IMG/VR virus record: IMGVR_UViG_3300028394_002328
Span: 1 to 64,000 of that record
Strand: one strand, 5' to 3'
DNA length: 64,000 nucleotides
A program made the translations under genes and the position numbers. A model generated the notes under the pieces. That model was not told where the DNA came from. It was given only the letters and a program-made list of their open reading frames with translations, and did not search any database. Shown here one piece after another: positions 32,708-64,000 of this stretch; within the stretch, counting starts at the first letter, position 1; every line of letters starts with the position of its first letter.

Positions 32708-33033
32708 GCGACGATGTAGTTATTATTTGGGAAGCACCCAAAATCATACCTCCTGAATTTCGGTTATATTACGACGAAAAGGGTAATGTTATTTGCTATA
32801 GTTGTCAACAGTTAGAAGGCAATTATATTGTAATTGATGCATTAACTTATGCTATAGCAAGACCTGATGTAAGAATCATTGATGGAAAAATTTCAACAGT
32901 AGCACCTGATGCAGTAGTATATAAATTAATGCCATCAGATGATGGTACTGCTTGTGCTTCAGAAGATATTAGCATTATTTCAGACGGGTCAATAGAAACA
33001 ACTAAGTGGAAATTAAGAATTTATGAGTTATGA
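32704..33033 (+). CDS. Hypothetical protein
   Basis: 109-aa ORF overlapping both neighbours. Confidence 0.6.
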   Translation: MSDDVVIIWEAPKIIPPEFRLYYDEKGNVICYSCQQLEGNYIVIDALTYAIARPDVRIIDGKISTVAPDAVVYKLMPSDDGTACASEDISIISDGSIETTKWKLRIYEL

Positions 33034-33973
33034 TATAGTTGATGTAGCTGATTTAGATTGCGTATATCTTAGCTATGATGAGCCACAGAAAGAAGAATTT
33101 TGGCTCAAAATTAAAAATATGATTCCATGGGCTAAAAGAGTTGACGGAGTAAAAGGTAGTGATGCAGCACATAAAGCAGCAGGCGAGGCTAGTGATACTG
33201 AAAGATTCATTCTAATCGACGGGGATAATATGCCTGATGAATCATTTTTTAATCTTCAATTAGACTTTACTGACAAAGATCCTAAATATCATCAAGCACA
33301 GTTTCGTTGGAAAGCAATTAACGCTGTCAATGGATTACGGTATGGCAATGGTGGTATGAGCAGTTGGACAAAAACTTATGTCAGGGACATGCAAACACAT
33401 GAACACCAAAAAAACGGTGATCTATCTCGTGTTGCTGATTTTTGTTTAGATAGTGCTGACAATTTGTATTGGGCTATGTATGATTGCTATAGTACTACAT
33501 ACCCTAACTATACTCCTTTCCAAGCATGGCGTGCTGGTTTCCGCGAAGGTGTTAAGATGTGCTTGAATCGGGGTGCAGTCCCAACTATAGATGAGTTTAA
33601 AGAAACAGTAGCAAGTAGAAATTTAAACAATCTTACTATATGGCACAATGTTGGTGCAGACGTTGATAATGGTATGTGGGCAATATATGGCGCAAGACTT
33701 GGTACATATATGACTATGCTAACTGCTTGGGAACATATTAATGTGCAGTGGTTTGACAACTACCCAGTACTATGGGAAGAACATAAAGATAAAGACCCAG
33801 AGCGTGAATCAACGTTACTAGGAGTTGCTCTACACGATAAACTTGGATTGCCTATGTGTACTCTAGGAAAAGAGCAAAGCAAATTTTTCAAACGTCATTA
33901 TAACGCAGATAAACATAATTTAGGTCCTTTGATTACTGAAATGGATGTGATTCGTAGAATCGAAGGATGGTGA
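33023..33973 (+). CDS. GT-A-like (glycosyltransferase-related) protein
   Basis: 'VYLSYDEP...KRVDGVKGSDAAHKAA...FILIDGDN': Rossmann-like start with a DxD motif; 'QAWRAGFREGVKM'. Confidence 0.6.
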   Translation: MSYDIVDVADLDCVYLSYDEPQKEEFWLKIKNMIPWAKRVDGVKGSDAAHKAAGEASDTERFILIDGDNMPDESFFNLQLDFTDKDPKYHQAQFRWKAINAVNGLRYGNGGMSSWTKTYVRDMQTHEHQKNGDLSRVADFCLDSADNLYWAMYDCYSTTYPNYTPFQAWRAGFREGVKMCLNRGAVPTIDEFKETVASRNLNNLTIWHNVGADVDNGMWAIYGARLGTYMTMLTAWEHINVQWFDNYPVLWEEHKDKDPERESTLLGVALHDKLGLPMCTLGKEQSKFFKRHYNADKHNLGPLITEMDVIRRIEGW

Positions 33974-36626: not shown

Positions 36627-37856
36627 ATGGCACACGATACTGAATACTTATTAAAGAAAAGTGAAACATTTTGCATGTTTCCGTGGGTTCATTTTATGAC
36701 TACACCAAAAGGCGATGTATTTCCTTGTTGTGTTGGTGTAACCGAAACTCCTATGACTACCCTTACACCTAGCTCTACATTTGAAACTATTATTAATAGC
36801 GATAATTTTAAAAAATTACGCAGAGATATGTTATCAGAAACAAAAAATTCAACCTGCACTCATTGCTATAACACAGAAAAATACACTGAAGGCAGTTGGC
36901 GATCTTTTGGAAATTCTAATTTTGGTTCAAATATTGATGAGGTATTATTGAATACCAAAGAGGATGGAACTGTTAACAACTTTAAAATGAAATATTACGA
37001 TATTAGATTTAATAATATTTGTAATTTTAAGTGTAGAATGTGCGGCCCAGACTACAGCACATTGTGGGCTCAAGAAGAAAATAATAGGCTAAAACCATAT
37101 CATCAAATACCTGTTTATAATTTATCCAAAACTACAAAATTATTATCAGAATTTTTGTCACATGTTGATGATGTAGAATTTGTTTATTTTGCAGGTGGTG
37201 AACCATTAATTACTGAAGAACATTATATTATTTTAGAAGAGTTAATTAGGAAAAATAAAACTCATGTTAAAATAAGATATAATACCAACTGTAGTGTATT
37301 ATCATATAAAGATAAAAATATATTTGATTTGTGGAAGCATTTTGATCATATTGATATATCGGCAAGCATAGACCATATAGGTGAACGTGCGGAATATATT
37401 AGAACTGGTACTGATTGGGGAACAGTTGAGACCAATTTAAAAAAGTTTAATAGCACGGAAAATGTGTCATTGTCTATTAACACTGTACTCAGTATCTATA
37501 ACTATACTACATTACCTTTATTATATGAGTATTTTATTGATTTTGGAATAATTAACAATAAATCAAGTAACAGTTTAATATGTACAACAACACCTGAATA
37601 TTTTGCTTCTACGGTATTGCCTAAAATACTAAAAGAACGGGCTTTGCCAAATATTCTGAAGTTGGTTGAGAAAATGACAACCTTAAATTCGGGATACTTA
37701 ATTGAACCGGCTATTAATTTTACACATTCAAGCAATGATTGGGAAGCACAAAAAGAAAACTTTTTGAAAGAAACATTAATGCGAGATGAACTTAGAAACG
37801 ACTCTTTTGAAAAAACTTTTCCTGAATTGATTACTATGATAGACGGTTCTATATGA
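36627..37856 (+). CDS. Radical SAM enzyme with N-terminal twitch/SPASM-like domain (copy 3)
   Basis: 'FCMFPW...PCC...CTHC', CNFKCRMC, 'FAGGEP'. Confidence 0.9.
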   Translation: MAHDTEYLLKKSETFCMFPWVHFMTTPKGDVFPCCVGVTETPMTTLTPSSTFETIINSDNFKKLRRDMLSETKNSTCTHCYNTEKYTEGSWRSFGNSNFGSNIDEVLLNTKEDGTVNNFKMKYYDIRFNNICNFKCRMCGPDYSTLWAQEENNRLKPYHQIPVYNLSKTTKLLSEFLSHVDDVEFVYFAGGEPLITEEHYIILEELIRKNKTHVKIRYNTNCSVLSYKDKNIFDLWKHFDHIDISASIDHIGERAEYIRTGTDWGTVETNLKKFNSTENVSLSINTVLSIYNYTTLPLLYEYFIDFGIINNKSSNSLICTTTPEYFASTVLPKILKERALPNILKLVEKMTTLNSGYLIEPAINFTHSSNDWEAQKENFLKETLMRDELRNDSFEKTFPELITMIDGSI

Positions 37857-39085
37857 TTATGGACAAAAATTATTTACTAAATGAAAGTAAAGTGTTTTGT
37901 ATGTTTCCGTGGATGCATTTAAATGTTACTCCTAAGGGAGATATATATCCTTGTTGTAGTAATGACTACACAGTCCCGTTTGGTAATACAAAGCAATCTA
38001 CTCTAAAAGATGCATTCAATAGCAGTCAAATGAAGCAATTACGACTAGACATGTTGGCTGACAAACCAAACAAGATATGTAACTTTTGCTATAAACATGA
38101 AGAAGCAGGGCCGCATAGTTTCAGAAACTATAGTAAAGAACAGTTTGGTAAGCATTTTGATGAGATTATACCCACTACCCTTGAAGATGGTACTGTTCCT
38201 GAATTCAAAATGCATTACTTTGATATTAGGTTTAGTAATATATGTAATTTCAAATGCAGAACATGTGGAAGTGAATTTAGTAGCCAATGGGGAGCAGAAA
38301 TGCGAGCCAATCATGATCCTAAACATCCCATAGTTATTCATGCTGATGAGAAAGGCAATTTACTGCGTGAAGTATTGGATCAGGTAGAACATATTGACTT
38401 GGCATATTTTGCAGGTGGCGAGCCTACTCTGACTGAAGAACACTATATTATGCTGGAGGAAATGATTCGCAAAAAGCGTACGGATATTACACTTAGGTAT
38501 AATACTAATGCTAGTAATATTAAGTTCAAAGACTATGATTTGTTAGACATGTGGAAACACTTTAAAAAGATTGAACTAAGTTGTAGCATAGATCATTATG
38601 GAGAACGAGCAGAATGGTTACGCCATGGCACTGATTGGGGTCTAGTTGAAAGTAACTTATTAAAATTTAGAGAATTAGATTATATTTCATTCCAATTGAA
38701 CACTGTTTTTTCATTGTTTAACTACTTGACTATTGGAGAATTCTACTCATACCTAAAAAGTAAAGGATTGGTTCGTACTCATGATTGGTATCATAGTTTA
38801 TACTTAGCAGTGCATCCTAGTCACTATAGTGGTAAGAGTTTGCCCAAAGAATTAAAAATTGAGGCTGCAAATAAAGCATTGGCTTGGGCAAATCAACACC
38901 ATGATGATGGGACATCGTTATCACGTTTAGTAACGGATTCAGTTAACTTTGCAAAAGATTCTGATACTTGGGCTGCTAATAAAGAAACGTTTATGATGCA
39001 CACTGGATCAGGGGATAAGATACGAGGCGAAAATTTTTGGAAAACATTCCCTGAATTAAATAAACTACAAGATTTGACGGAGTAA
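37853..39085 (+). CDS. Radical SAM enzyme with N-terminal twitch/SPASM-like domain (copy 4)
   Basis: 'FCMFPW...PCC...CNFC', CNFKCRTC, 'FAGGEP'. Confidence 0.9.
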   Translation: MIMDKNYLLNESKVFCMFPWMHLNVTPKGDIYPCCSNDYTVPFGNTKQSTLKDAFNSSQMKQLRLDMLADKPNKICNFCYKHEEAGPHSFRNYSKEQFGKHFDEIIPTTLEDGTVPEFKMHYFDIRFSNICNFKCRTCGSEFSSQWGAEMRANHDPKHPIVIHADEKGNLLREVLDQVEHIDLAYFAGGEPTLTEEHYIMLEEMIRKKRTDITLRYNTNASNIKFKDYDLLDMWKHFKKIELSCSIDHYGERAEWLRHGTDWGLVESNLLKFRELDYISFQLNTVFSLFNYLTIGEFYSYLKSKGLVRTHDWYHSLYLAVHPSHYSGKSLPKELKIEAANKALAWANQHHDDGTSLSRLVTDSVNFAKDSDTWAANKETFMMHTGSGDKIRGENFWKTFPELNKLQDLTE

Positions 39086-39087
39086 AA

Positions 39088-40365
39088 ATGCAAAACCCAC
39101 TAGTAATAGAAAATTTAGTTAAGTTTGGCAAACACTTTTGTGTATTACCTTGGGTGCATTTTCATTCATGGCCAGACGGTAAAGTAATGCCTTGCTGTGT
39201 TGCTGACAGTGATATGCCAGTTGCAAACATTAATAATGGCGAATCTATTATTCAGATGATGAATAGTGATGACTATAAAAAAATGCGTGAAGCAATGTTA
39301 GTTGATGAACCTGTTGAAGCATGTAGAAGATGCTATGATTTAGAATTATTAGGCACGTGGACTATGCGTAAAAGTCATAATAAGCGCAGAGGTCTTGAAT
39401 ATGTTGACATGATTGCAAAGACTACCGATAATGATGGAACTATTTCTGAATTTCAAATGAAGTATATGGATTTGCGTTTCAGTAATATGTGCAACATGAA
39501 ATGTCGCAGTTGCGGTCCAGGGTGTAGTAGTCTTTGGGCACAAGAATATATTGAAGAAAAAGGCTCGGTTGAATATGAAAAGCATTTTAAAACTAAAAAG
39601 ATAGTAGTCAATACCGCAGAAGAAATGAGTTTTATGAATAAATTAAAACCATATCTCGCGGATGTATTAGAAGTTTATTTCGCAGGTGGAGAAATTATTA
39701 TTACTCCTGAACACTATGAGTGTTTAGATTATTGGGTTGAGAATGGGTTGACTGATCAGGTTGAATTAACTTACACAACCAATTTTAGTGCTATGAAATA
39801 TAAAGATAAAGACTTACTTGGTTATTGGAAGAAGTTCCCGCAATTAAAAATTTGGGCTAGCCTAGATGCTCACGGAGACGTAGCGGAAGTTATACGCAAG
39901 GGCACAGATTGGGAAAGAATTGTAAAAAACATTAGAACATTAAAAGAACAAGTACCTCATGCACAATTTCAAATCACACCAACCCTTAGTATTTGGAATA
40001 TATTTGATTTTCCTGATTTTTTTGATTATCTGATTAAAGAAAATCTAATAGATGATAAGACAACTAGCCCTAGATTTAATCTAGCAACTAACCCATGGTA
40101 CGCAAACATTATGATATTGCCTGTGTCTGTTAAACACAGATTGATAGAACTGTACCGTGTGTATGCAGATAGATATGAAAATGTGAACATTGAACTACAC
40201 AATGGCTTTAAAATGATAATTTATAATCTAAGTGTAGGTGAAGAAAACAAGGGTGGCATTTTAGAGTTTAAAAAGTTCAATGATGAATTAGATCAATTTA
40301 GAAATGAAAAGATAGAAGATATTATTCCTGAACTCAAAGAGATTTATCAGTGGGCCGAAAGTTAA
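39088..40365 (+). CDS. Radical SAM enzyme with N-terminal twitch/SPASM-like domain (copy 5)
   Basis: 'FCVLPW...PCC...CRRC', CNMKCRSC, 'FAGGEI'. Confidence 0.9.
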   Translation: MQNPLVIENLVKFGKHFCVLPWVHFHSWPDGKVMPCCVADSDMPVANINNGESIIQMMNSDDYKKMREAMLVDEPVEACRRCYDLELLGTWTMRKSHNKRRGLEYVDMIAKTTDNDGTISEFQMKYMDLRFSNMCNMKCRSCGPGCSSLWAQEYIEEKGSVEYEKHFKTKKIVVNTAEEMSFMNKLKPYLADVLEVYFAGGEIIITPEHYECLDYWVENGLTDQVELTYTTNFSAMKYKDKDLLGYWKKFPQLKIWASLDAHGDVAEVIRKGTDWERIVKNIRTLKEQVPHAQFQITPTLSIWNIFDFPDFFDYLIKENLIDDKTTSPRFNLATNPWYANIMILPVSVKHRLIELYRVYADRYENVNIELHNGFKMIIYNLSVGEENKGGILEFKKFNDELDQFRNEKIEDIIPELKEIYQWAES

Positions 40366-41327
40366 TCGCTATAGAGGCTCCCCAGCCTTACTTGGCCGTT
40401 ACTTGGCAAGTTAATAACTATTGTAACTTTAGGTGTAGTTATTGTAACCCGGGCAATTGGGGAGGCACTGACATCAATGATGGCAATCTAGACTTATACA
40501 TCAACAATCTAGATATTATCATTAATCGTTATAGAGAGATAGGTTATAAGAATTTTAAATTTTTCTTTAGTGGTGGTGAGCCCACTGCTTGGCGTAACTT
40601 TATTCCAATATGTGAATGGTTGTACAAAGAACTACCCCATGCTACATTAGCAGTCAATACTAATTTAAGTCGCCCGTTAAAATGGTGGGAGAAAAATCAT
40701 TATTTATTTGATGATGTAGTTGCTAGTTTTCATGTAGAGTTTGCTGATAAAAAACGGTATGAAGAAAATAGTATATTCTTATGCGATAAGGTAAACTATT
40801 TGGCTACTAAGATGTTACTACATGAGGAAAGATTTTGGGAAGTAGTAGAGTTTGGTAAGCATTTGAAAACTGTAATGCCAAACTACTTCTTAGAATGGAC
40901 TCCGCTATTTGATGAAATGACAGTCAATGCTGGCCCTTGGGAATACAAAGATCCTGCAAAAACTCAGTTCATTAATGATTGTACATCAGAGCATCAACAA
41001 ATCAAGCCAAAGCCTGATAAAAGATCAAACTACAATGTTAGTTATAATAGATATGATGATAATCATACAGAAGTGTGTAACAGTAATGAGGTAATTGTTG
41101 CAGGTAATAATTACTTCAGTAGTTGGCGCTGCAATGTAGGTGATGCTATCTTTATCAATCCAGTGGGCGAGATTAGTTTAGCAAGTTGTGGTATGGGTGG
41201 CAATGCGGGTCATATATTAAAGGATATTTCTCGTGTTGGACCTAAACAAATCATTTGCAAAAAAGAACATTGCCACTGTGGCACAGATATTATAATCCCT
41301 AAATTTATAAACAATGGCAATCCTTAA
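40350..41327 (+). CDS. Radical SAM enzyme with C-terminal Cys-rich (SPASM/twitch-like) domain
   Basis: N-terminal CNFRCSYC, 'FSGGEP', C-terminal 'WRCNVG...SCG...ICKKEHCHC'. Confidence 0.88.
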   Translation: MGRKLIAIEAPQPYLAVTWQVNNYCNFRCSYCNPGNWGGTDINDGNLDLYINNLDIIINRYREIGYKNFKFFFSGGEPTAWRNFIPICEWLYKELPHATLAVNTNLSRPLKWWEKNHYLFDDVVASFHVEFADKKRYEENSIFLCDKVNYLATKMLLHEERFWEVVEFGKHLKTVMPNYFLEWTPLFDEMTVNAGPWEYKDPAKTQFINDCTSEHQQIKPKPDKRSNYNVSYNRYDDNHTEVCNSNEVIVAGNNYFSSWRCNVGDAIFINPVGEISLASCGMGGNAGHILKDISRVGPKQIICKKEHCHCGTDIIIPKFINNGNP

Positions 41328-50708: not shown

Positions 50709-52958
50709 TTGGATTTTAACCTAACGTCATTAGCAGTAGATAAGTTAGTTCCTAAAGAACGGCCTACAGAAGATATTGCCGATGCCCGACATCGTAATAT
50801 GATGGAGGCTATAGCGCCCTATGCAAAGAAAACAGAACAAAAAAATCTAACACCTGTATATGTTAATTATAAAACCCGCAATACTAAATTAGTATTGGTA
50901 TTATGTCCTGAATGGAGTCCGTATATGCCGCCCTTTAGTCTAGCTAGACTAAGTGGTATAGCAAAAAGTGCAGGATATGAAACTACTATTATGGATTTGA
51001 ATGTTAGAGCCTATAACGAATATCGTAACGATTGGCAACCTAATAAAAAACTCCCATTCAGACTATGGGATCCTAGTAGCAGTTGGCACTGGCTAGGCGA
51101 GACTTATATGAATGATATTCATCCCGTATTAGAGCCTGTACTTAGTAAAGCAATAGATGATATAGTTGAACTAAATCCTGAAGTAGTTGGCTTTAGTATA
51201 TATTATATTAGTGAAGAGCCAACTAAGTGGATGTGTAAAGAACTCAAACGTAGACTGCCCAATGTAAAAATTGCAGTAGGTGGACCCAACGTACACAAGA
51301 GTTGGTTTAAAGTAGAACCATATTATGATTATGCAGTTGTGGGTGAAGGTGAGGCAAACTTATTAGTATTACTTGAAGAAGTAGAAAACGGTATCAACCA
51401 CAGTGAACCTAAGATTCTAGATCAACCCGAAGAGCAGCGTATCAACATAAATGGCTTGCCTATGCCAGACTATGAGTCTATAGATTTTAGTCAATATGAA
51501 TTGCCTAACGGAGTAAACACAGAAATTAGTAGGGGCTGTACAGCAAAATGTACTTTTTGCGAAGAGACACATTTTTGGCGATATCGTCAGCGTCAATCTG
51601 TTGATTTGATTACGGAAATCGAATGGCTATACTATAATAAGGGTACAGATGTTGTTTGGTTCATTGATAGTTTAGTCAATGGCAACTTAAAAGAGTTGAG
51701 GGCTTTTGTCAAAGGAGTCGCCGCTAAAGGTCTTAAGATTAAGTGGACAGGATATGCCCGCTGTGACGGCCGAATGGATCTAGAATACATGAAAGATTTA
51801 GCTGCCGGTGGTTGTATCATGTTTAACTATGGGATAGAATCCGGTAGTCAAAAAGTATTGGACGATATGGCTAAAGGCGTCACGATTGCAGAGATGGAAC
51901 AAAACTTCATCGATGGTAAAAAGGTGGGTATATGGGCTGCTACAAACTGGATTGTAGGATTCCCCACTGAAAATTTTCAAGACTATGCCGATAGCATGAC
52001 ACTACTATGGCGTATGCGTAATAATAATATTAATAACGCCGGCTTGGGAGTAGGTTATGGCTTGGGCCCTGAAACTATAGTAGGTCAAAATCCGCATAAA
52101 TTTAATATTAGTTGGCACAAGTATCAAGGACATTGGATTACAAAAGACTTGACAATGGGCGGTACTCATGTCATGACTAGAGTAAAAACGTTTCATATGT
52201 TTGCCGATTTTATACAGGGGTGTAGTGAAGTTCCAATTGGTTATCCAGTGAGACACAGTTTAGCAAGAGAACATTATAAAATAGAATTGAATGATCCTAA
52301 GTGTATCAAAGAAATTGAATATGAAAAATTTGATTATAATATTATTAAAGTAGATATTAATCCATTTGCTAATACATTAGTAAATGAAATGTGGCCATTC
52401 TTTCGAATGCTTTGGAAAACTAGAGGTGGATATAAAGCTGTAGTGAAATTTCATCCTGACATTGATTTAAAAGAGTTTGGCAGTCAGTTTGGACCCGGCA
52501 TGTATTATGCTACTTATAAGTTTGATATCACGGATGACGGCAAGTGGGATGCCGATTTTGATATTATTTTTAATCAAGTAGATAATATATTTGACGATAG
52601 AGAACGTCCGCCTCTAGGTAGAAAAGGTCCTTTTTACGCACAAGACTATAGTAGAATTCAAGCTAATACAGCCAAACGTGCCCGTAAATTAGCAAAGCCA
52701 ACATGGAGCGATGAAGAAGGTAGAGATGGACAAGATTTTACAGACTTGTTAAATGAAGAACAAATGTTAAATGAAACTATTGATTTCTCATTTAAGCTAC
52801 ATTGGGTTGAGTCAGGTGATTGGGGCAACTATGCCGACTATGAAGTTAAAGTTTCTGATACTACTACCGTTGTGATTCCTGAAAAGAAAGCAATGTCGGC
52901 TACAGAATTTGCTACAATTGACGTAACATCTATTAAAAAACGTGAACCCAATACTTGA
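50709..52958 (+). CDS. B12-binding-domain radical SAM enzyme (class B methyltransferase-like)
   Basis: 'PPFSLARL...VVGFS...IAVGGP...VVGEGE' cobalamin-binding domain; 'RGCTAKCTFC'; 'GIESGSQKVL..M.KG'; 'IVGFPTE'. Confidence 0.9.
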   Translation: MDFNLTSLAVDKLVPKERPTEDIADARHRNMMEAIAPYAKKTEQKNLTPVYVNYKTRNTKLVLVLCPEWSPYMPPFSLARLSGIAKSAGYETTIMDLNVRAYNEYRNDWQPNKKLPFRLWDPSSSWHWLGETYMNDIHPVLEPVLSKAIDDIVELNPEVVGFSIYYISEEPTKWMCKELKRRLPNVKIAVGGPNVHKSWFKVEPYYDYAVVGEGEANLLVLLEEVENGINHSEPKILDQPEEQRININGLPMPDYESIDFSQYELPNGVNTEISRGCTAKCTFCEETHFWRYRQRQSVDLITEIEWLYYNKGTDVVWFIDSLVNGNLKELRAFVKGVAAKGLKIKWTGYARCDGRMDLEYMKDLAAGGCIMFNYGIESGSQKVLDDMAKGVTIAEMEQNFIDGKKVGIWAATNWIVGFPTENFQDYADSMTLLWRMRNNNINNAGLGVGYGLGPETIVGQNPHKFNISWHKYQGHWITKDLTMGGTHVMTRVKTFHMFADFIQGCSEVPIGYPVRHSLAREHYKIELNDPKCIKEIEYEKFDYNIIKVDINPFANTLVNEMWPFFRMLWKTRGGYKAVVKFHPDIDLKEFGSQFGPGMYYATYKFDITDDGKWDADFDIIFNQVDNIFDDRERPPLGRKGPFYAQDYSRIQANTAKRARKLAKPTWSDEEGRDGQDFTDLLNEEQMLNETIDFSFKLHWVESGDWGNYADYEVKVSDTTTVVIPEKKAMSATEFATIDVTSIKKREPNT

Positions 52959-53526
52959 GTTTGAAACGGTTATAAAAGAATATTATAACAGCCCATATGC
53001 GGTTACAACTGATTGTTGTACCCACGCTATTGAACTATGTATTAGGTTATTAAAGCCAACTGAGGTATCATGTCCAAAACACACCTACCTAAGTGTTCCA
53101 ATGACATTTGAAAAATTAAATCTAGATTGGAGATTTAAAAATTTTAAATGGAATGATTATTATTATATAACTAATAATATTATTGATGCGGCAGTATATT
53201 GGAAGCCCGATGGATATATCCCTAATACATATATGTGCTTGTCATTTCAATTTAAAAAGCATTTAAATGTGGGTAGAGGTGGCATGATATTAACCGACGA
53301 TTATGAATCTTATAAAAAATTAAAAAAGATGAGTTATGATGGTAGGCTTCCCGATATTGCATGGGCTGAACAAGACGTAGACACATTGGGTTATCATTAT
53401 TATATGACACCTGAAACTGCTGAGTTGGGTTTAGATAGATTTCACGAAGTAAAGGACATTGAACCTAGACAATGGTCTTGGAAAGACTATCCCGACTTAA
53501 CAACAATGAGTGTATTCAAATGCTAA
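52942..53526 (+). CDS. DegT/DnrJ/EryC1/StrS-like PLP aminotransferase (short form)
   Basis: 'DCCTHAI', 'IIDAA', 'SFQFKKHL..GRGGMILTDD', 'GYHYYM'. Confidence 0.8.
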   Translation: MNPILEFETVIKEYYNSPYAVTTDCCTHAIELCIRLLKPTEVSCPKHTYLSVPMTFEKLNLDWRFKNFKWNDYYYITNNIIDAAVYWKPDGYIPNTYMCLSFQFKKHLNVGRGGMILTDDYESYKKLKKMSYDGRLPDIAWAEQDVDTLGYHYYMTPETAELGLDRFHEVKDIEPRQWSWKDYPDLTTMSVFKC

Positions 53527-56221: not shown

Positions 56222-56320
56222 ATGTTTATATTTAAATGGATTAAGAATATTATCCGAGAATACAAATACCGTAAAAGAATTAAAGAATTACGCAAACGGG
56301 ATCCTTTCATATACAAATGA
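56222..56320 (+). CDS. Small basic peptide (32 aa) coupled to the carbamoyltransferase
   Basis: Translated by hand: MFIFKWIKNIIREYKYRKRIKELRKRDPFIYK*. AAGGAG RBS at 56209-56214; ATGA overlap with 56317. Confidence 0.75.
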   Translation: MFIFKWIKNIIREYKYRKRIKELRKRDPFIYK

Positions 56321-57798
56321 ACTATATAGGAATATCAGCAGGATTCCATGACGCTGCTATTAGTGTGGTAGACAATTCAGGCGACATACTATTTGCTGGG
56401 CATAGTGAACGGTATAGTAAGAAAAAACATGATAAAGACTTATGCCAAAAGTTACTTACGGACGCATTAAGTTACTGTAATTCAGAATCAATAGAGTATC
56501 ATTACTACGAAAGACCATGGTTAAAAGCACTTAGACAGTTACGTAGTGGTGAGGGTTTTGTTTGGCCAAGTTGGAAAAACTTATTAGGTCCCATCTATAA
56601 TCAAATGGGTAAACCAAAGATACATGTACATGGTCATCATCTATGCCATGCAGCAGCAGGATTTCAAACCAGTCCTTATAGTGACGCCACAGTTGTAATA
56701 ATTGACGCTATAGGTGAGTTTGACACTATGACGATTTGGGATGCTAGATATGACCTTATAACTGGCAAGGCTGCCTATGAGAAACTATGGAGTATGCAAT
56801 ATCCAAACAGTGTTGGCTTGTTCTATTCGGCCATGACTGAGCGAGTCGGATTGCGTCCACTAGATGAAGAATATATTCTTATGGGCATGGCTGCATATGG
56901 TCATCCTCATCATGTTGATAATATGTTTGATGCGTTAATAGATGACGATGACATATTGACCTTTAAACAGAACCTACATGTTGGGGTGAGCAAAGAATTT
57001 TTGAAAGATGCTAAAGAAACAGACATTGCTAGTAGTAGTCAACAGATAGCAGAGTATATGATAACTCTAGTTGTAAGCAAGGCTAAACGTTTAGGTAGAA
57101 GTAGAAATCTAGTATACGGTGGCGGTGTAGCATTGAACTGTTTAGCCAACAGATTATTAGGAAATATATATGAAAATATTTGGATTATGCCGAACCCTGG
57201 TGATGCAGGTAATAGCCTTGGTGCAGCATGTCTTGGCTATGGCACTAAACTTAATTGGAGTAATGCTTTTCTTGGCTATGATATCACTGGGGATTATCCT
57301 GTTCACAGGTTACTTGATAGTTTACTTACTGATAGGATGGTTGGTGTTGCGTCCGGTAGGGCAGAATTTGGACCGAGGGCCTTAGGTAATCGTAGTTTGT
57401 TGGCAGATCCTCGAGGTGATGATATCAAAGATAGAGTAAATGAAATTAAGCGTAGACAAAAGTTTAGACCATTCGCCCCTATCATTCTTGAGGAATATGT
57501 ACATGATTACTTTGACATGCCAAAGTCTTGGGGGAATAGTAGGTATATGCAAGTGATTGCTAACTGTAAATACCCTGATCAATTTCCTGCTATCGCACAT
57601 GCCGACAATACTAGTAGGGTACAAACAGTGCCCAAAGATGGATCGGGTATTAGAGAGTTATTAGAGAAATGGTACGTTATAACTGAATGTCCAATGTTGT
57701 TGAATACTAGTCTGAACATTCGTGGTGAGCCAATGGTCAATGACAGGACCGATGCTGACAGATTTGAAAAACTGTATGGGGTCAAAGTTCTGTCATAA
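56317..57798 (+). CDS. Carbamoyltransferase (NodU/CmcH/TobZ family)
   Basis: 'GFHDAA', 'HHLCHAA', 'DAIGE', 'MGMAAYG', 'GGVALNCLAN', 'EFGPRALGNRS', 'RQKFRPFAP', 'LLNTSLN'. Confidence 0.93.
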   Translation: MNYIGISAGFHDAAISVVDNSGDILFAGHSERYSKKKHDKDLCQKLLTDALSYCNSESIEYHYYERPWLKALRQLRSGEGFVWPSWKNLLGPIYNQMGKPKIHVHGHHLCHAAAGFQTSPYSDATVVIIDAIGEFDTMTIWDARYDLITGKAAYEKLWSMQYPNSVGLFYSAMTERVGLRPLDEEYILMGMAAYGHPHHVDNMFDALIDDDDILTFKQNLHVGVSKEFLKDAKETDIASSSQQIAEYMITLVVSKAKRLGRSRNLVYGGGVALNCLANRLLGNIYENIWIMPNPGDAGNSLGAACLGYGTKLNWSNAFLGYDITGDYPVHRLLDSLLTDRMVGVASGRAEFGPRALGNRSLLADPRGDDIKDRVNEIKRRQKFRPFAPIILEEYVHDYFDMPKSWGNSRYMQVIANCKYPDQFPAIAHADNTSRVQTVPKDGSGIRELLEKWYVITECPMLLNTSLNIRGEPMVNDRTDADRFEKLYGVKVLS

Positions 57799-57809
57799 GT
57801 AATTACATC

Positions 57810-60800
57810 ATGAGAGATGTATTTTATTACGGCGAAAAACCCAACGTTCATCCAAAAGAAAAATTTGCAACTTCAATAGAAGATGCTAGGCGTCAATCAA
57901 CGACAGAACATTTTTGGATAATCAATGAATTCTGTGACTATCGCAATTTTGATTGGGATTTTGATTTTGAATTCCTGCCCGATGAAGATGTATGGGCAGA
58001 AGACCATAACAATGTATGGCCTAGTCAACATCAAAAAGACAGTGGCACTTGGCTATGTTCAAAGAAAAACAGTGATATAATTATCTATCGTGCTGATGTT
58101 GACCCTGTTATTCGTAAGAATATAAAGAACGATCACTGGGTATTATTAGATTTAATTGATGAAAATAAATTTGATTTTAGTTGGCACCCTGATCCAACTG
58201 ATCCTCCTTATAATTATAAATGGGGATGTAAGTTTTTTCCAGTAGAATTACAGGCATGTTTAGAATATCGTATTGATGGTGCGTTCAAAACAAAATACAT
58301 GAAAGAAATTGTAGAATTGTTACCACAGTATGATAGATGGGTAGAAGTACAAGAGATAGATAAATTAGCATTTGATATGTCATGGAGACCCAATCCATTG
58401 GATCCCCCTATGAATTATATATGGGGTAACAAATATATTGATGGTAATCTACGTTCAACTCTAGAATACCGTATACCAGGTGCAATTGATACAAAATACA
58501 TGCCTGATTTAATTTCGGTAGTACCTGAATGGGATAAGTGGGTAGAAGTACAAAAAGTAAATAAGTCTACATTTGATTTTACATGGAGACCTGATCCACG
58601 TGAACCTGCGTATATCTATACTTGGGGTAACAAATATATCGATTCTGAGCTAAGGCCAACACTTGAATACCATTGTGAAGGGGCTACTGAACGCAAGTAT
58701 ATGTCTAATGATGTAGAGGTATTACCTGAATGGGATAAGTGGGAAATACTTCATCCTATAGATAAATCTACATTTAATTTTACATGGAGACCTGACCCTA
58801 GAGAACCAAATTTAAATTATGTATTTGGTAATAATCAGTATGACAGTACAAAAATGCCTACCATTATTTACAAAATGGAAGGTGCTACCGATGAAAAGCA
58901 TATGCCGAGTAATGCTAAATTGTTACCACAGCCTAACAGGTTTCAACATTTAGAAGATAGTTATGGCATAGATTATTCTTGGGTTCCTGATCCTACTAGT
59001 CCTCCTTATATATATGTTTGGGGTAATCAATGGAATAACCCTCAAGATAAAATATCTATTCAATATGTAGTTGAAGGAGCAACAGAATACAATTATATGG
59101 CAGAACGTGCTATTCGTAAGCCATGTAAAGATAATTGGGAAATACCTAACAATGTGGATATTACTGGGTTTGATTTTAGTTGGGAACCTAGTCCAGCAGA
59201 TCAACCTTATATCTATCAATTTGGCACTCAATGGCAAAAGACAGGTGGACCAAGATATCTAACACCTGGCGTACATAAAAATAGTGATGTTAAGTATGTT
59301 GATTTACAAAAAGTAAAAATGTTACCTAGTAAAGATAACTTCATTATCTTAGACAATGTTGTTGTAGATGATTTTGATTATAGTTGGCATTCCGATGAAA
59401 CAGAAGAGCCATACATATATGTATTTGGTAATAATTTATACTCTGCTGAAATTATGCCAACTATTCAGTATGTACCTAAAAATGCAGTCAGAGCAGCATC
59501 AGGCAAATCAATTGGACAAATAAAATATGTCAATGATATTATCGCTACGTTAGGAGAGAATAGAAATAATTGGGTAATTAATCAACCAATAGATGAAACT
59601 AAATTTGATTTTAGTTGGGTACCCAACCCCAAAGACCCAGCTTACATATACCGTTGGGGTAACAAATATATTTCTAATGTATATAAACCAACTATTGAAT
59701 ATATAGTTGAAGGTGCAACTGAAATAAAATACATGGACGACAGTGTTGCTGTATTACCCGAGTTTGATCGTTGGTATATCCCATCTAATATTGATGATAC
59801 TGGTTTTGATTATACATGGAGACCTGATCCACTAGAACCTGTATTAATTTGGCAATTTGGTACACAATGGCAAAAGACGGGCGGACCTAGATATACCATG
59901 CCTGGTGCCATTGAAGTCAAATATGTTAGTATACACAAGGTAAAAGCATTGCCTAATAAAGACAATTGGACTATACCTAAAAATATAGATATATCTAATT
60001 TTGATTTCAGTTGGCATCCTGATGATACTTCACCTCCTTACATATATAGGTTTCCCACTCAGTGGGCAATGAGTGGTGGTCCTATTTACACTGTAGTTGG
60101 AGCAACAGAAGTAAAGTATATAGATACCTTTAGGGCTAAAGCACTACCTAGTATAGATAATTGGGAATTCGATTCTAATAATATTGATTTGTCTAACTTT
60201 GACTTTAGTTGGCATCCATACGCAGAAGACGAGCCGTTCATATACCAATTTGGTACTCAATGGCAAAAGACAGGTGGTCCTAGATATTTAACTCCAGGAG
60301 TTCATAAAAATAGTCCTGTAAAATATATTGATACACGCATTATAAAAGCAAAAAGATTACCTAATAAAAATAATTTTATAATCATTGATAATAATGTAAT
60401 TGACAATTTTGACTACTCATGGCATCCTGATGAAACAGAGGAGCCATTTGTTTATATATTTGGTAACACTCAATATCCAGCCGAGATAATGCCTACAATA
60501 AAATATGTTGTAGAAGGTGCTACTCAAATAAAATATATTAATGATGTAGTTGCTGTACTAGGTGAAAATAAGAAAGTTTGGCATATCCCTGATAATATTG
60601 ATGATAGTTCATTTGATTATACTTGGGTGCCTAATCCCAAGGACCCGCCGTATATATACGAATTTGGTACGCACTGGCAAAAAACTGGTGGTCCAATCTA
60701 TGCTGTTAAAGATGCCACTGAAGTCAAATATATTGATTATCAAAAAGTAACCGCATTGCCTAATAAAGATAATTGGACTATACCTGGTAACGTGGATATA

Positions 60801-63800
60801 TCTGAATTTGATTTTAGTTGGCATCCAGATTCTACAAGTCCACCATATATCTATAGATTTCCCACTCAGTGGGCAATCAGTGGTGGTCCAACATATACTA
60901 TAATTGGTGCAACAGAGATAAAATATTTGGATACGATTAAGGTCAAAGCGCTACCTTGCAAAGATAATTGGGAATTTGATTCCAATATTATTGACAATGA
61001 AAACTTTGACTTTAGTTGGCATCCATATGCGGAAGACGAACCTTTTATATACCAATTTGGAACCCAGTGGCAAAAAACAGGTGGACCAAGGTATTTAACA
61101 CCTGGTATACATAAAAATAGCCCTGTAAAATATATTGACACTAGAATTATAAAAGCAAATAGATTACCTAATAAAGATAATTTTATCATCATTGATAATA
61201 ATGTAATTGATAGCTTTGATTACTCATGGCACCCTGATGAAACCGAAGAGCCATTTGTGTATATATTTGGTAACAATCAGTATCCAGCTGAGATAATGCC
61301 TACACTAAAATATGTTGTAGAAGGTGCTACAAAAATAAAGTATGTTAATGATATAGTTGCTATACTAGGTGAAAACAAAACTTATTGGGAAATACCTGAA
61401 GGTGTAGATGTAATTGAGTTTGATTTTAGTTGGGTACCTAATCCTAAAGATCCTGCATACATTTATGAATTTGGTACACAATGGAATGATAGGGGAGGTC
61501 CAAAATATGTTCCACCTAATAAAGGGCTTAGATTGGGTTCGGGTAAGATCATTGGTCAATATAAGTATGTCAGTGATCAAATTGCTACCTTGGGGGAAAA
61601 TAAAACAAATTGGATTATACCTGATAATATTGATATTACGGATTTTGATTTTAGTTGGGTTCCGCATCCCGATGACCCACCGTATATATATGAGTTTGGT
61701 ACACAGTGGCAAAAAACAGGTGGTCCAAAGTATGTAGTTTCAGGTTATACTGAAGTTAAATATGTTGCTACCCTTAAAGCTAGAATATTACCTAACAAAG
61801 ATAATTGGGAAGTACCTGAAAATATTGACAGTGCGAGTTTTGATTTTAGTTGGCATCCAGATGCAACTGAAGAACCCTATGTATATAAATTTGGAACCCA
61901 GTGGCAAAAAACAGGTGGACCAAGGTATTTAACACCTGGTATACATAAAAATAGCCCTGTAAAATATATTGATCCTAAAGTTCTTAGTAGTAAGAGATTG
62001 CCTAATAAAGAAAATTTTACTATAATAGATAATATTATTGTTGCTCATTTTGACTATAGTTGGCATCCTGACGAAACCGAAGAACTATATGTATATGTAT
62101 TTGGTAATAATTATTATCCAGCAGAGATAATGCCAACTGTTCAATACATACCTAAAGGTGCGATAATATCGGCATCAGGTAACCCCATTGAACAAATAAA
62201 ATATGTTAGTGGTGTGGTCGCTATACTAGGTGAAAATAAAACCAATTGGATAATACCTAAAGATATTGATCAACCCTCTTTTGATTTTAGTTGGGTTCCG
62301 CACCCAAACGATGAACCTTACATATATCAATTTGGTACACAACATCAAAAAACAGGTGGGCCGCAGTATGTACCAACTGCTATACCTAGGTTAGCATCAG
62401 GTTCTGCAATTGGTCAGGTTAAATATGTTGATGGTATAAAGGCTAAAAAGCTACCTAATAAAACTAATTGGACTAATCCTAGCAAAGTGGACGTTAGTAC
62501 ATTTGATTTCAGTTGGCACCCGGATGATACGTCACCTCCTTACATATATCAATTTGGTACATTATTAGATAGAGAAGATGGACCTAGGTATATGACTCCA
62601 AAGACTAATGGAGTGATTGTTTATTTGGAAAAAGTTGAAAAGGAAATTGAGGAAGTAGTAGAAGAAATTGTAAAAGACACTTTTCCCAAATATTATATTA
62701 CTACTACACTTGATGATTTAGTAAAACAACATCCAAATGAAATGTTTTGGGCATTAAACCCTGATTTGGATTATAGTGAATTTGATTTTGATTGGAGACC
62801 CAATATTGACAGATCACAATATGAGTCTGAATACGTTCATGCATTTGGTTCGAGTGAAAGTGAAAAAACACAAACTTATCTAGTTAATAGTACAATGTGG
62901 GAGAAAGGTCTTAGAGAATTAAATTGGGTTGTTGATAAAAAACTTGATGATGAAACCTTGTTTAAAATGTTCAAAAAGCCTGACATATTCTTCGTAGATA
63001 AAAGCAACCTAGAATCTCAAGCAAGGTACGAACAACTTAAAACTAAGTTTCCCAACATACAAAAAACACGTTACCTAAACAGTTGGGTCGATACTATCAA
63101 TCGTTGCATCAACAGGGCAAGTAATAACTTGTGTTGGATATTAAACAGCGAGCTAGACTATACTAATTTTGATTTTGATTATTATCCTAATCCATGGCAA
63201 ATGAAAATGGTCCATGTATTTGGAACACAATGGAGTCATTGGGGAACTACATTCATGATCAACCGTGAGACATTTGCTGAAGATACCAAGTGGATTAAAA
63301 TAATAGAGCATTTGAATAATCTTAATTTCGTAAAAGATAGAACTGCAATTGCTACTGATAATATATATGACATATATGTAGTAGACCATGGTAATAAAGA
63401 AACTGCAAAAGTTGTTCAACAATTAACCAATAAAGCATCAGGTAAATTAGTTAATACTATACCATACTCTGAAAATTATCTACTGACCTTTAAGAAATTA
63501 TTAAAACAACTTCTAGAAAAGAAAGAACACTATATTTGGATATGCAGTAGCATATGTGATTATAGCGATTTTGATTTTAGTTATGTTTGTGATCCTTTTG
63601 CCCGTGAGCAATTACATGTATTTCCTAGCGATAAACAAAAGTTAGGTGATACCTTTTTAGTTAATATTAATAAGTTTCGTGAATTAATTGATAATATGAC
63701 TTTATTAAATGAGTATAATAAAATCAATTATAACCAACATCAAACCGTTAAAAGATTAGATTCACCTACTATAATTACTAATTACGATTCGCATGTATTA

Positions 63801-64000
63801 AGTGTAATGGAAGACTTTGACTTCCCGTATGCTGTATTCTTATCAGAAGATAATAAAGATTTAAAAGTTACCGATGAAGAACCAATTAGTTTATGGAGTA
63901 GTGATACTAAGAACATTGTTATTACTAGTACTGGTGGAACAAGAATAGTAGTTCCTAAAGAAGCTAAAAATTATGTAGACACACAATTGTATGATTATCC
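57810..64000 (+). CDS. Giant tandem-repeat protein (>2,060 aa, 3'-truncated) with degenerate GT-A-like C-terminal domains; absent from the ORF track
   Basis: Translated by hand from ATG 57810 (MRDVFYYGEKPNVHPKEK...); I found no in-frame stop before the window end (...KNYVDTQLYDY). Confidence 0.88.
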   Translation, partial: MRDVFYYGEKPNVHPKEKFATSIEDARRQSTTEHFWIINEFCDYRNFDWDFDFEFLPDEDVWAEDHNNVWPSQHQKDSGTWLCSKKNSDIIIYRADVDPVIRKNIKNDHWVLLDLIDENKFDFSWHPDPTDPPYNYKWGCKFFPVELQACLEYRIDGAFKTKYMKEIVELLPQYDRWVEVQEIDKLAFDMSWRPNPLDPPMNYIWGNKYIDGNLRSTLEYRIPGAIDTKYMPDLISVVPEWDKWVEVQKVNKSTFDFTWRPDPREPAYIYTWGNKYIDSELRPTLEYHCEGATERKYMSNDVEVLPEWDKWEILHPIDKSTFNFTWRPDPREPNLNYVFGNNQYDSTKMPTIIYKMEGATDEKHMPSNAKLLPQPNRFQHLEDSYGIDYSWVPDPTSPPYIYVWGNQWNNPQDKISIQYVVEGATEYNYMAERAIRKPCKDNWEIPNNVDITGFDFSWEPSPADQPYIYQFGTQWQKTGGPRYLTPGVHKNSDVKYVDLQKVKMLPSKDNFIILDNVVVDDFDYSWHSDETEEPYIYVFGNNLYSAEIMPTIQYVPKNAVRAASGKSIGQIKYVNDIIATLGENRNNWVINQPIDETKFDFSWVPNPKDPAYIYRWGNKYISNVYKPTIEYIVEGATEIKYMDDSVAVLPEFDRWYIPSNIDDTGFDYTWRPDPLEPVLIWQFGTQWQKTGGPRYTMPGAIEVKYVSIHKVKALPNKDNWTIPKNIDISNFDFSWHPDDTSPPYIYRFPTQWAMSGGPIYTVVGATEVKYIDTFRAKALPSIDNWEFDSNNIDLSNFDFSWHPYAEDEPFIYQFGTQWQKTGGPRYLTPGVHKNSPVKYIDTRIIKAKRLPNKNNFIIIDNNVIDNFDYSWHPDETEEPFVYIFGNTQYPAEIMPTIKYVVEGATQIKYINDVVAVLGENKKVWHIPDNIDDSSFDYTWVPNPKDPPYIYEFGTHWQKTGGPIYAVKDATEVKYIDYQKVTALPNKDNWTIPGNVDISEFDFSWHPDSTSPPYIYRFPTQWAISGGPTYTIIGATEIKYLDTIKVKALPCKDNWEFDSNIIDNENFDFSWHPYAEDEPFIYQFGTQWQKTGGPRYLTPGIHKNSPVKYIDTRIIKANRLPNKDNFIIIDNNVIDSFDYSWHPDETEEPFVYIFGNNQYPAEIMPTLKYVVEGATKIKYVNDIVAILGENKTYWEIPEGVDVIEFDFSWVPNPKDPAYIYEFGTQWNDRGGPKYVPPNKGLRLGSGKIIGQYKYVSDQIATLGENKTNWIIPDNIDITDFDFSWVPHPDDPPYIYEFGTQWQKTGGPKYVVSGYTEVKYVATLKARILPNKDNWEVPENIDSASFDFSWHPDATEEPYVYKFGTQWQKTGGPRYLTPGIHKNSPVKYIDPKVLSSKRLPNKENFTIIDNIIVAHFDYSWHPDETEELYVYVFGNNYYPAEIMPTVQYIPKGAIISASGNPIEQIKYVSGVVAILGENKTNWIIPKDIDQPSFDFSWVPHPNDEPYIYQFGTQHQKTGGPQYVPTAIPRLASGSAIGQVKYVDGIKAKKLPNKTNWTNPSKVDVSTFDFSWHPDDTSPPYIYQFGTLLDREDGPRYMTPKTNGVIVYLEKVEKEIEEVVEEIVKDTFPKYYITTTLDDLVKQHPNEMFWALNPDLDYSEFDFDWRPNIDRSQYESEYVHAFGSSESEKTQTYLVNSTMWEKGLRELNWVVDKKLDDETLFKMFKKPDIFFVDKSNLESQARYEQLKTKFPNIQKTRYLNSWVDTINRCINRASNNLCWILNSELDYTNFDFDYYPNPWQMKMVHVFGTQWSHWGTTFMINRETFAEDTKWIKIIEHLNNLNFVKDRTAIATDNIYDIYVVDHGNKETAKVVQQLTNKASGKLVNTIPYSENYLLTFKKLLKQLLEKKEHYIWICSSICDYSDFDFSYVCDPFAREQLHVFPSDKQKLGDTFLVNINKFRELIDNMTLLNEYNKINYNQHQTVKRLDSPTIITNYDSHVLSVMEDFDFPYAVFLSEDNKDLKVTDEEPISLWSSDTKNIVITSTGGTRIVVPKEAKNYVDTQLYDY
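58140..62620 (+). repeat. ~22 tandem coding repeats of ~195-231 bp (consensus W.IP..ID...FDFSWHP....PYIY.FG.QWQKTGGP.Y......KY......LP.K)
   Basis: FD(F/Y)(S/T)W motif starts at about 58170, 58371, 58572, 58773, 58968, 59169, 59373, 59604, 59805, 60000, 60198, 60408, 60612, 60807, 61005, 61215, 61419, 61644, 61839, 62049, 62280 and 62502. Confidence 0.88.
61054..61972 (+). repeat. 85-bp perfect direct repeat (61054-61138 and 61888-61972)
   Basis: Identical sequence 'aatttggaacccagtggcaaaaaacagg...ccctgtaaaatatattga' at both sites. Confidence 0.85.

What the first reader, a model, noticed from the sequence alone, without database searches (positions are those of the whole stretch)
62700..63700. 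Repeat unit appears to be an amplified sub-domain of a degenerate GT-A fold
Seen: after the array, two domains (62979 'PDIFFVD...LCWILNSELDYTNFDFDYYP...VHVFG' and 63366 'YDIYVVD...YIWICSSICDYSDFDFSY...LHVFP') resemble the layout of the GT-A-like protein at 33023 ('DCVYLSYD...FILIDGD') but lack DxD. Both end in the same FDF.(W/Y)...F(G/P) motif that defines the tandem repeat, and the N-terminus ('HFWIINEFCDYRNFDWDF') is similar. Inference: the repeat arose by amplifying the post-DxD segment of a pseudo-glycosyltransferase.
Basis: inference. Interest (0 to 1): 0.62.

Follow-up and report, generated by a model that had tools for sequence, protein, structure and literature searches.

The report
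Tandem half-glycosyltransferase repeats, jumbo phage
A 2,298-residue protein of an uncultured jumbo phage is built almost entirely from copies of one small glycosyltransferase-like (GT-A fold) domain, and its 22 tandem repeats are copies of the second half of that domain, a way of making a repeat protein that has not been described or annotated before.

Summary
The ORF 57810..>63998 continues to base 64706 of the 335-kb virus record. It reads N-domain, 22 repeats of 65-77 aa, A', B (62976-63359), C (63360-63809), E, then D, which lies outside the window.

- **Homology chain:** ORF 33023 family to D, E 3e-32. D to B, 3e-5. B to C, 6e-18. B to A', 1e-16. A' to repeat, 5.5e-14. B to repeat, 1.8e-9.
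- **DxD motif:** only ORF 33023 keeps DxD (DGD).

Three corrections:
- The repeat unit starts at the DxD-equivalent strand, not after it.
- The true paralogue of ORF 33023 is domain D, beyond the window.
- B, N and D are the best conserved parts (66-73% among 50+ orthologues), so "degenerate" or "pseudo" is unproven.

Repeat number runs from 1 to 33 in related phages. There are no Pfam or PHROG hits, and every database name is "hypothetical protein". Function is inferred: a non-catalytic rod or binding scaffold tied to the adjacent glycan gene cluster.

The parts
57810..63998 (+). Giant ORF, aa 1-2063 of 2,298. It continues to base 64706 of the record, outside the window.
   Evidence: It is conserved in 78 IMG/VR loci.
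57810..58109 (+). N-domain (aa 1-100): a mini GT-A-like module with no DxD ('NEF' at that place).
   Evidence: hhalign against A' gives 97% (E 5e-11), against B 96% (1e-9) and against the repeats 95% (3e-8). Mean identity among orthologues is 70.5%.
58110..62645 (+). Array of 22 tandem units (aa 101-1612, 65-77 aa each). Each unit is the W-strand, the FDFSW-P loop, and then three strands.
   Evidence: Units are 25-50% identical to each other. One recent block duplication links units 10-12 with 14-16 at 78-91% aa identity.
62682..62975 (+). A' (aa 1625-1722): a half-size module and the closest relative of the repeat unit.
   Evidence: hhalign of A' against the repeats gives 98.2%, E 5.5e-14, 66 columns. 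A' against B gives 98.8%, E 1.2e-16.
62976..63359 (+). Domain B (aa 1723-1850): a complete minimal GT-A fold of 128 aa. N1779-S-E1781 (63144-63152) sits where DxD would be.
63360..63809 (+). Domain C (aa 1851-2000): a paralogue of B, with S-S-I at the DxD place.
   Evidence: BLASTP gives 7e-13. hhalign gives 99%, E 6e-18.
63810..63998 (+). Segment E (aa 2001-2070, cut by the window end). After it comes domain D (aa 2071-2298, record bases 64020-64703, outside the window). D is the paralogue of ORF 33023, with W-G-K in place of D-G-D.
   Evidence: hhalign of the ORF 33023 family against D gives 99.9%, E 3.4e-32.
33023..33973 (+). ORF 33023 (P0002, 316 aa): a GT-A fold protein with conserved D66-G-D68 (33218-33226) and an extra C-terminal helical domain. 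It is the only likely active member.

Best explanation
**Shown.** The giant protein is a concatenation of variants of one small GT-A-fold module.
- Two full minimal copies (B and C).
- Two shortened copies (N and A').
- One long copy (D) that is a true paralogue of the neighbouring DxD-bearing glycosyltransferase-like ORF 33023.
- 22 tandem copies of the second half of the module. Each holds the strand that carries DxD in ORF 33023, the FDFSW-P loop, and the next three beta strands.

The array grew by unit and block duplication. Its length changes quickly between related phages, from 1 to 33 units. None of the modules in the giant protein keeps DxD.

**Inferred (about 0.3-0.35).** The protein does not itself transfer sugars by the usual metal-dependent route.
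- The half-modules correspond to the acceptor-side half of a GT-A domain. Stacked, they form a rigid beta-rich rod of variable length.
- The conserved N, B and D modules bind a ligand, either a nucleotide-sugar or the glycan made by the adjacent gene cluster. That cluster encodes a carbamoyltransferase, a C-methyltransferase, an epimerase, a dehydrogenase, an aminotransferase, radical SAM enzymes and ORF 33023.
- The protein would therefore act as a glycan-binding or glycan-presenting scaffold, or as a fibre expressed with the baseplate and fibre block.
For: - **Architecture and homology chain:**
- **GT-A fold of B and ORF 33023:**
- **Same order of secondary-structure elements in the repeat and in the second half of B:**
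- **High confidence over the repeats:** pLDDT is 82-95 and pTM 0.68 for a four-part model, which argues for fixed packing rather than beads on a string.
- **Copy number:** 1 to 33 units with a constant N...A'-B-C-E-D frame in 78 loci. Close relatives (89-92% identity in the C-terminal part) have 21 and 33 units.
- **DxD-place residues:**. D also lacks the family's N-G-G and H-E motifs.
- **Gene context:** the gene always ends the glycan cluster and follows the baseplate genes on the same strand. In Ralstonia phage RsoM2USA a stand-alone D-like protein lies two genes after the ORF 33023 orthologue.
Against: - The repeat alone was not folded or superposed on a GT-A structure, so its match to the half-domain rests on profiles and on the order of secondary-structure elements.
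- The D to B link is moderate (72%, E 3e-5).
- The direction of evolution (module to repeat) is inferred, not rooted.
- B, N and D are strongly conserved and keep invariant polar residues (S1780, E1781, R1754, R1765, K2139, H2176). This would equally fit catalysis.
- There is no evidence on location (virion or cell), ligand, or expression.
Confidence: 0.6

Rival explanations
1. The modules without DxD are active enzymes, either metal-independent or using other residues. On this view the giant protein is a multi-site glycan polymerase or modifier, and the repeat array is an acceptor-binding track or ruler that sets product length.
For: - B, N and D are the most conserved parts: 72.6, 70.5 and 66% mean identity. 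B has 30 invariant columns in 45 orthologues, many of them polar.
- D has an invariant Lys (K2139) where the second Asp of DxD would be. From general knowledge, some metal-independent GT-A enzymes use basic residues there.
- The gene is embedded in a sugar-modification cluster.
Against: - D has lost DxD, N-G-G and H-E, which are at least 90% conserved in its own family.
- There is no match to any curated transferase family.
- B has 128 residues and lacks the usual acceptor-side elaborations.
- No activity data exist.
Confidence: 0.25
2. The array is a substrate rather than a binder. Each unit would be glycosylated by ORF 33023, or cross-linked by the neighbouring SPASM / radical SAM enzymes, to give a decorated virion fibre.
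For: - Five tandem SPASM / radical SAM genes and a likely active GT-A lie upstream on the same strand.
- Each unit has near-invariant W, Y, K and S/T positions.
- Variable copy number is typical of exposed fibre or decoration proteins (general knowledge).
Against: - The conserved residues of the unit are shared with the non-repeat modules, and partly with D. They therefore look like fold determinants, not modification sites.
- There are no proteomic or mass data.
- The radical SAM genes sit among sugar-nucleotide enzymes and may act on sugars.
Confidence: 0.1
3. The repeat is an unrelated beta-rich domain that shares only a short FDF-W-P motif with the GT-A-like domains, by convergence or chance.
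For: - The D to repeat alignment covers only 22 columns.
- ORF 33023 family to repeat is not significant (E 0.41).
- The repeat's own fold was not searched separately.
Against: - A' to repeat aligns 66 of 72 columns (E 5.5e-14). B to repeat aligns 55 columns (1.8e-9). N to repeat aligns 59 columns (3.4e-8).
- The strand order is the same.
- In the genome-wide control the best unrelated ORF scores E 0.64.
Confidence: 0.05

Closest known systems
Minimal viral GT-A glycosyltransferases (PBCV-1 A64R, PDB 2p6w; STIV A197, PDB 2c0n) and GT2-type enzymes (SpsA 1h7l, GmaR)
   Different: There is no significant sequence match to any curated GT family. B, C, D, A' and N lack DxD. B has only 128 residues, with three strands before the DxD place. 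No solved GT-A is known to me in which half of the domain is tandemly amplified.
Human B4GALNT1 and the chondroitin polymerase complex CHSY3-CHPF (PDB 9h6j, 9q8z)
   Different: They are eukaryotic, membrane-anchored and much larger, and they have no repeats. Sequence identity is 5-10%.
Nucleotidyltransferases of the same fold (MobA 1fr9, IspD 1w77, Aquifex Aq1419 2e8b)
   Different: These enzymes make nucleotide-activated products and have their own signature loops, which were not tested here. The fold match alone does not tell the two activities apart.
RsoM2USA_350 and RsoM2USA_348 of Ralstonia jumbo phage RsoM2USA (both 'hypothetical protein')
   Same: These are the only relatives in cultured phages. 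_350 is 39% identical to ORF 33023. _348 is a stand-alone D-like protein (28% identity, E 1e-16) two genes downstream.
   Different: RsoM2USA has no repeat array and no N, A', B or C modules. Neither protein has been characterised.

Membership tests
GT-A fold (nucleotide-diphospho-sugar transferase superfamily) | Three-layer alpha/beta/alpha fold that superposes on solved GT-A structures | tested here: met
GT-A fold (nucleotide-diphospho-sugar transferase superfamily) | DxD (or a variant) metal-binding motif at the end of the central strand | tested here: not met
   The giant protein has N-S-E (B), S-S-I (C), W-G-K (D) and N-E-F (N) at that place. A' and the repeats likewise carry no D-x-D there. 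The motif is met only in ORF 33023, where D66 and D68 are at least 90% conserved.
GT-A fold (nucleotide-diphospho-sugar transferase superfamily) | Significant match to a curated glycosyltransferase sequence family | tested here: not met
   There are no Pfam or PHROG hits for the giant protein or for ORF 33023. Some longer family members give only sub-threshold Glycos_transf_2 hits, below the curated cut-off.
GT-A fold (nucleotide-diphospho-sugar transferase superfamily) | Transfer of a sugar from a nucleotide donor | not testable with these tools
   This needs an enzyme assay.
ORF 33023 / RsoM2USA_350 family (unnamed, 1,129 clusters) | Full-length profile match | tested here: met
   Domain D against the family profile gives 99.9%, E 3.4e-32, 214 columns. 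B gives E 2.7e-4 over 57 columns only, and the repeats are not significant.
ORF 33023 / RsoM2USA_350 family (unnamed, 1,129 clusters) | Family-invariant D66, D68, N109-G-G111, H126-E127 | tested here: not met
   In domain D these are replaced or absent. E20, P21, N100, N103, Y107, G108, R174, E175 and K178 are kept.
Repeat unit as the second half of the mini GT-A module | Profile similarity over most of the unit, with the same order of strands | tested here: met
   A' to repeat gives E 5.5e-14 over 66 columns, and B to repeat 1.8e-9. The order of secondary-structure elements comes from the AF2 model.
Repeat unit as the second half of the mini GT-A module | Three-dimensional superposition of an isolated unit on the half-domain | not tested

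The most novel reading that the evidence does not exclude
Half of a Rossmann-like GT-A domain has become an autonomous repeat unit. It builds a rigid rod of tunable length (1-33 units) in Rak2-like jumbo phages. The rod would be a new class of multivalent carbohydrate-binding fibre, or a molecular ruler, that works with a phage-encoded pathway for an unusual carbamoylated, C-methylated amino sugar. This could be a virion-glycan system in uncultured freshwater phages.
Probability: 0.25. Interest if true: 0.8.

Novelty: new variant of a known kind. Interest (0 to 1): 0.6.

Why it matters
- **Protein evolution.** Alpha/beta enzyme folds are not usual sources of tandem repeats. Here a half-domain of the GT-A fold has been amplified up to 33 times and models with high confidence. 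This gives a concrete case of how a repeat protein can be born from an enzyme fragment.
- **Scale of the unannotated family.** It has no Pfam or PHROG model and every database name is 'hypothetical protein'. A word search limited to proteins of 251-800 aa still found more than 2,000 proteins. The ORF 33023 family has more than 8,000 word-search hits and 1,129 clusters at 50% identity. A domain model would annotate many jumbo-phage genes.
- **Phage glycobiology.** The fixed link to a large sugar-modification cluster next to the baseplate genes points to a phage glycan system that nobody has studied.

Tried and rejected
- **Pfam and PHROGs** on the whole protein, its ends and ORF 33023 gave nothing. 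The one exception was a 30-residue 'endolysin' hit at E 0.006, judged spurious.
- **PDB sequence search** of the C-terminal 685 aa returned only designed 'Pizza' propellers on a 25-32 residue stretch, with no significant domain. I rejected these. ORF 33023 alone gave nothing.
- **tblastn against 50,697 phage records** gave no match for the array or for A'-B-C. megablast of the first 12 kb gave none.
- **ESM Atlas** feature search on five units gave no usable hit. The Atlas structure search found only viral hypothetical clusters, TM at most 0.42.
- **Profile search with domain B alone**, looking for stand-alone or DxD-bearing relatives, found 21 hits. All were fragments of the same protein family.
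- **Own-genome search** for further paralogues found only ORF 33023 and the giant ORF.
- **ORF 33023 family profile against the repeats** was not significant (E 0.41). The link therefore exists only through D, B and A'.
- **RsoM2USA paper** has no data on its genes 348 or 350.
- **Not used:** reads tools, another genetic code, and complex prediction, because no binding claim is made.

Full report
**Setting.** The window is bases 1-64000 of a 335,035-bp IMG/VR virus record that CheckV estimates as 95% complete. Its baseplate wedge protein (5337-8708) is 31-33% identical to those of RaK2, K64-1, Atu_ph07 and other Rak2-like jumbo myoviruses. A gp5-type OB domain and a gp25-like protein lie just upstream. 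GC content is about 33% and no tRNA gene was found.

**The finding sits in one ORF.** It runs from 57810 to beyond 63998, is open at the window end, and stops at 64706 of the record, giving 2,298 aa.

**Observation.** P1724 starts at 62979, Y1853 at 63366, and the N-terminal string at 57909.

**Architecture of the protein**:

| Part | Residues | Note |
|---|---|---|
| N-domain | 1-100 | shortened module |
| Repeat array | 101-1612 | 22 tandem units of 65-77 aa |
| Acidic linker | 1613-1624 | |
| A' | 1625-1722 | half-size module |
| B | 1723-1850 | full minimal module |
| C | 1851-2000 | full minimal module |
| E | 2001-2070 | |
| D | 2071-2298 | outside the window |

- The units are 25-50% identical to each other.
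- One recent block duplication links units 10-12 with 14-16 at 78-91% aa and up to 90% nt identity.

**Control for chance.** An HMM made only from the 22 units was scored against the non-repeat segments and all 1,090 other ORFs of the genome. It ranks B (8.6e-7), A' (4.7e-6), D (5e-4) and C (0.014) first. The best unrelated ORF scores E 0.64.

**Homology chain.** I built profiles from 50-55 non-identical orthologues taken from 78 IMG/VR loci and compared them with hhalign.

| Comparison | Probability | E-value | Columns |
|---|---|---|---|
| ORF 33023 family (72 diverse members) vs D | 99.9% | 3.4e-32 | 214 |
| D vs B | 72% | 3.4e-5 | 81 (first strand to the FDF loop) |
| B vs C | 99% | 5.9e-18 | |
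| B vs A' | 98.8% | 1.2e-16 | |
| N vs A' | 97% | 5e-11 | |
| N vs B | 96% | 1e-9 | |
| N vs C | 96% | 2e-9 | |
| A' vs repeat | 98.2% | 5.5e-14 | 66 of 72 |
| B vs repeat | 96.3% | 1.8e-9 | 55 |
| N vs repeat | 95% | 3.4e-8 | |
| D vs repeat | 77% | 2e-5 | 22 |
| ORF 33023 family vs repeat | not significant | 0.41 | |
| ORF 33023 family vs B | weak | 2.7e-4 | |

BLASTP alone already gives D vs ORF 33023 at 5e-11 and B vs C at 7e-13.

**Register.** The printed alignments fix the register. D66-G-D68 of ORF 33023 corresponds to W-G-K2139 in D and to N1779-S-E1781 in B. In the repeat it corresponds to the short 'NW-x-I-P' strand. The repeat unit therefore includes the DxD-equivalent strand.

**Fold of ORF 33023.** With a 72-sequence alignment it models at pLDDT 91.7 and pTM 0.90.
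- Foldseek's best PDB rows are all GT-A or nucleotide-sugar transferase fold: HddC, RmlT, PBCV-1 A64R, SunS, TarP and BcsA, at E about 1e-3.
- Residues 180-316 form an extra helical domain.
- A family profile against PDB sequences gives GmaR (a GT2 enzyme) as best hit, across the helix plus DxD strand, but only at E 0.1.
- Longer family members carry sub-threshold GT2 hits, or fused GT-B domains.

**Fold of residues 1394-1850** (three units, A' and B). With 51 orthologues this segment models at pLDDT 87.6 and pTM 0.68.
- In the exhaustive scan of 48,161 representative chains, all 50 listed rows are this fold.

**Order of elements in the model**.
- B: strand, helix, strand, helix, DxD-place strand, FDF loop, strand, strand, helix, long strand.
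- Repeat unit: DxD-place strand, FDF loop, strand, strand, long strand.
- ORF 33023 has the same order as B up to residue 160.

**What is not shown.**
Scripts cannot read the coordinates. There is therefore no direct 3D superposition of a unit on the half-domain.
- The direction (module first, repeat second) is an inference from three facts. A' and N are intermediate forms. The complete modules have the wider fold family behind them. The array length is labile.
- Other architectures exist in the databases: units followed directly by D; units plus E-D; and N plus 4-5 units plus one B/C-like module plus E-D. D is thus the constant partner of the units, while N, A', B and C are optional. Which module gave rise to the unit is open.

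**"Degenerate" or "pseudo"?**
- None of the giant protein's modules has DxD.
- D has also lost the N-G-G and H-E motifs that are at least 90% conserved in its own family.
- B, N and D are nevertheless the most conserved parts among orthologues, at 72.6, 70.5 and 66% mean pairwise identity. A' is at 49.8% and C at 56%.
- B has 30 invariant columns in 45 orthologues, including S1780, E1781, R1754, R1765, Q1797, E1833 and H1834.
- These modules are therefore under strong constraint. Loss of canonical metal-dependent transfer is likely. Loss of all function is not. A different chemistry, or specific ligand binding, cannot be told apart here.

**Variation and context.**
- Orthologues keep the frame N - units - A' - B - C - E - D, but carry from 1 to 33 units (791 to 3,084 aa). 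Two relatives that are 89-92% identical in the C-terminal part have 21 and 33 units.
- The gene always closes a cluster of sugar-modification genes. It usually sits directly after a carbamoyltransferase (56317-57798), with an 11-base gap in the window.
- Further upstream lie a B12 / radical SAM enzyme, a UDP-glucose dehydrogenase-like protein, an epimerase, a sugar C-methyltransferase, an aminotransferase piece and several SPASM / radical SAM paralogues. The ORF 33023 operon is also upstream.
- In compact loci (L029, L084) the ORF 33023 operon is only 5-6 kb upstream of the giant gene.
- In Ralstonia phage RsoM2USA, the only cultured phage with any relative, the ORF 33023 orthologue is followed two genes later by a stand-alone D-like protein. 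All are annotated as hypothetical, and the paper has no data on them.
- Downstream of the giant gene come an AAA ATPase, a DUF2201 metallopeptidase/VWA protein, thymidylate synthase, a methyltransferase, the large terminase, a weak sub-threshold gp32-like match and a RecA/UvsX-like protein.

**Mechanism.**
- Shown: a modular protein made of GT-A-derived parts, with an expandable array of half-modules.
- Inferred: the array is a rigid beta-rich rod. High pLDDT over the units and a pTM of 0.68 for a four-part model argue against loose beads. Rod length would be tuned by unit number.
- Inferred: N, B and D are ligand-binding ends that recognise a nucleotide-sugar or the glycan made by the cluster. 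The whole protein would then act as a scaffold, lectin-like fibre or ruler, not as a conventional transferase.
- I give this functional reading about one chance in three.
- The main rival (about one in four) is that B and/or D are active by a non-DxD route.
- A third possibility (about one in ten) is that the units are substrates of the neighbouring glycosyltransferase or radical SAM enzymes.

**Novelty.**
- There is no Pfam or PHROG model and no named relative among the database members I looked up.
- The Atlas holds no annotated cluster for it.
- Among cultured phages, only RsoM2USA has relatives, and only of ORF 33023 and D.
- The fold is known. Tandem amplification of half of it is, to my knowledge, not described. 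I did not search the literature for this beyond RsoM2USA.
- I rate it a new variant of a known kind.

Noticed in passing
window 8717-27751 (+): A single 6,344-aa ORF lies directly after the gp6-like baseplate wedge gene. It has no Pfam family above threshold, only a weak FG-GAP-like stretch. It is probably a giant baseplate or fibre protein of this Rak2-like phage.
   Followed up: partly
window 33967-41327 (+): Six consecutive radical SAM-type genes. Four are paralogues of about 410-425 aa, each with a SPASM domain at the N-terminus, before the radical SAM core. That order is unusual. They follow ORF 33023 directly.
   Followed up: partly
L001 3500-4250 = record 64650-65350, just outside the window: A stretch of about 0.6 kb at 45-48% GC (the genome is about 33%) lies right after the giant gene's stop. 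It holds two small ORFs (84 and 116 aa) with signal-peptide or lipoprotein-like N-termini. It may be a host-derived insertion. A homologue of the second ORF follows the giant gene in other loci (L010, L079, L084).
   Followed up: partly
window 52942-53526 (+): A 194-aa ORF matches only positions 165-240 of the 360-position DegT/DnrJ aminotransferase model. It is either a truncated or split aminotransferase gene, or the start was called wrongly.
   Followed up: no
proteins P0175, P0186, P0202, P0271 (relatives of ORF 33023): Many members of the ORF 33023 family, about 730-810 aa long, carry an N-terminal GT-B (GT28/UDPGT-like) domain fused to the GT-A-like domain. These would be two-headed glycosyltransferases.
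   Followed up: no
window 58110-62645: Two unit subtypes alternate: a short 'GTQWQKTGGP' type and a longer 'GN-x-Y...MPT' type. In other architectures (P0345, P0362) they alternate strictly, which suggests a two-unit super-repeat.
   Followed up: no
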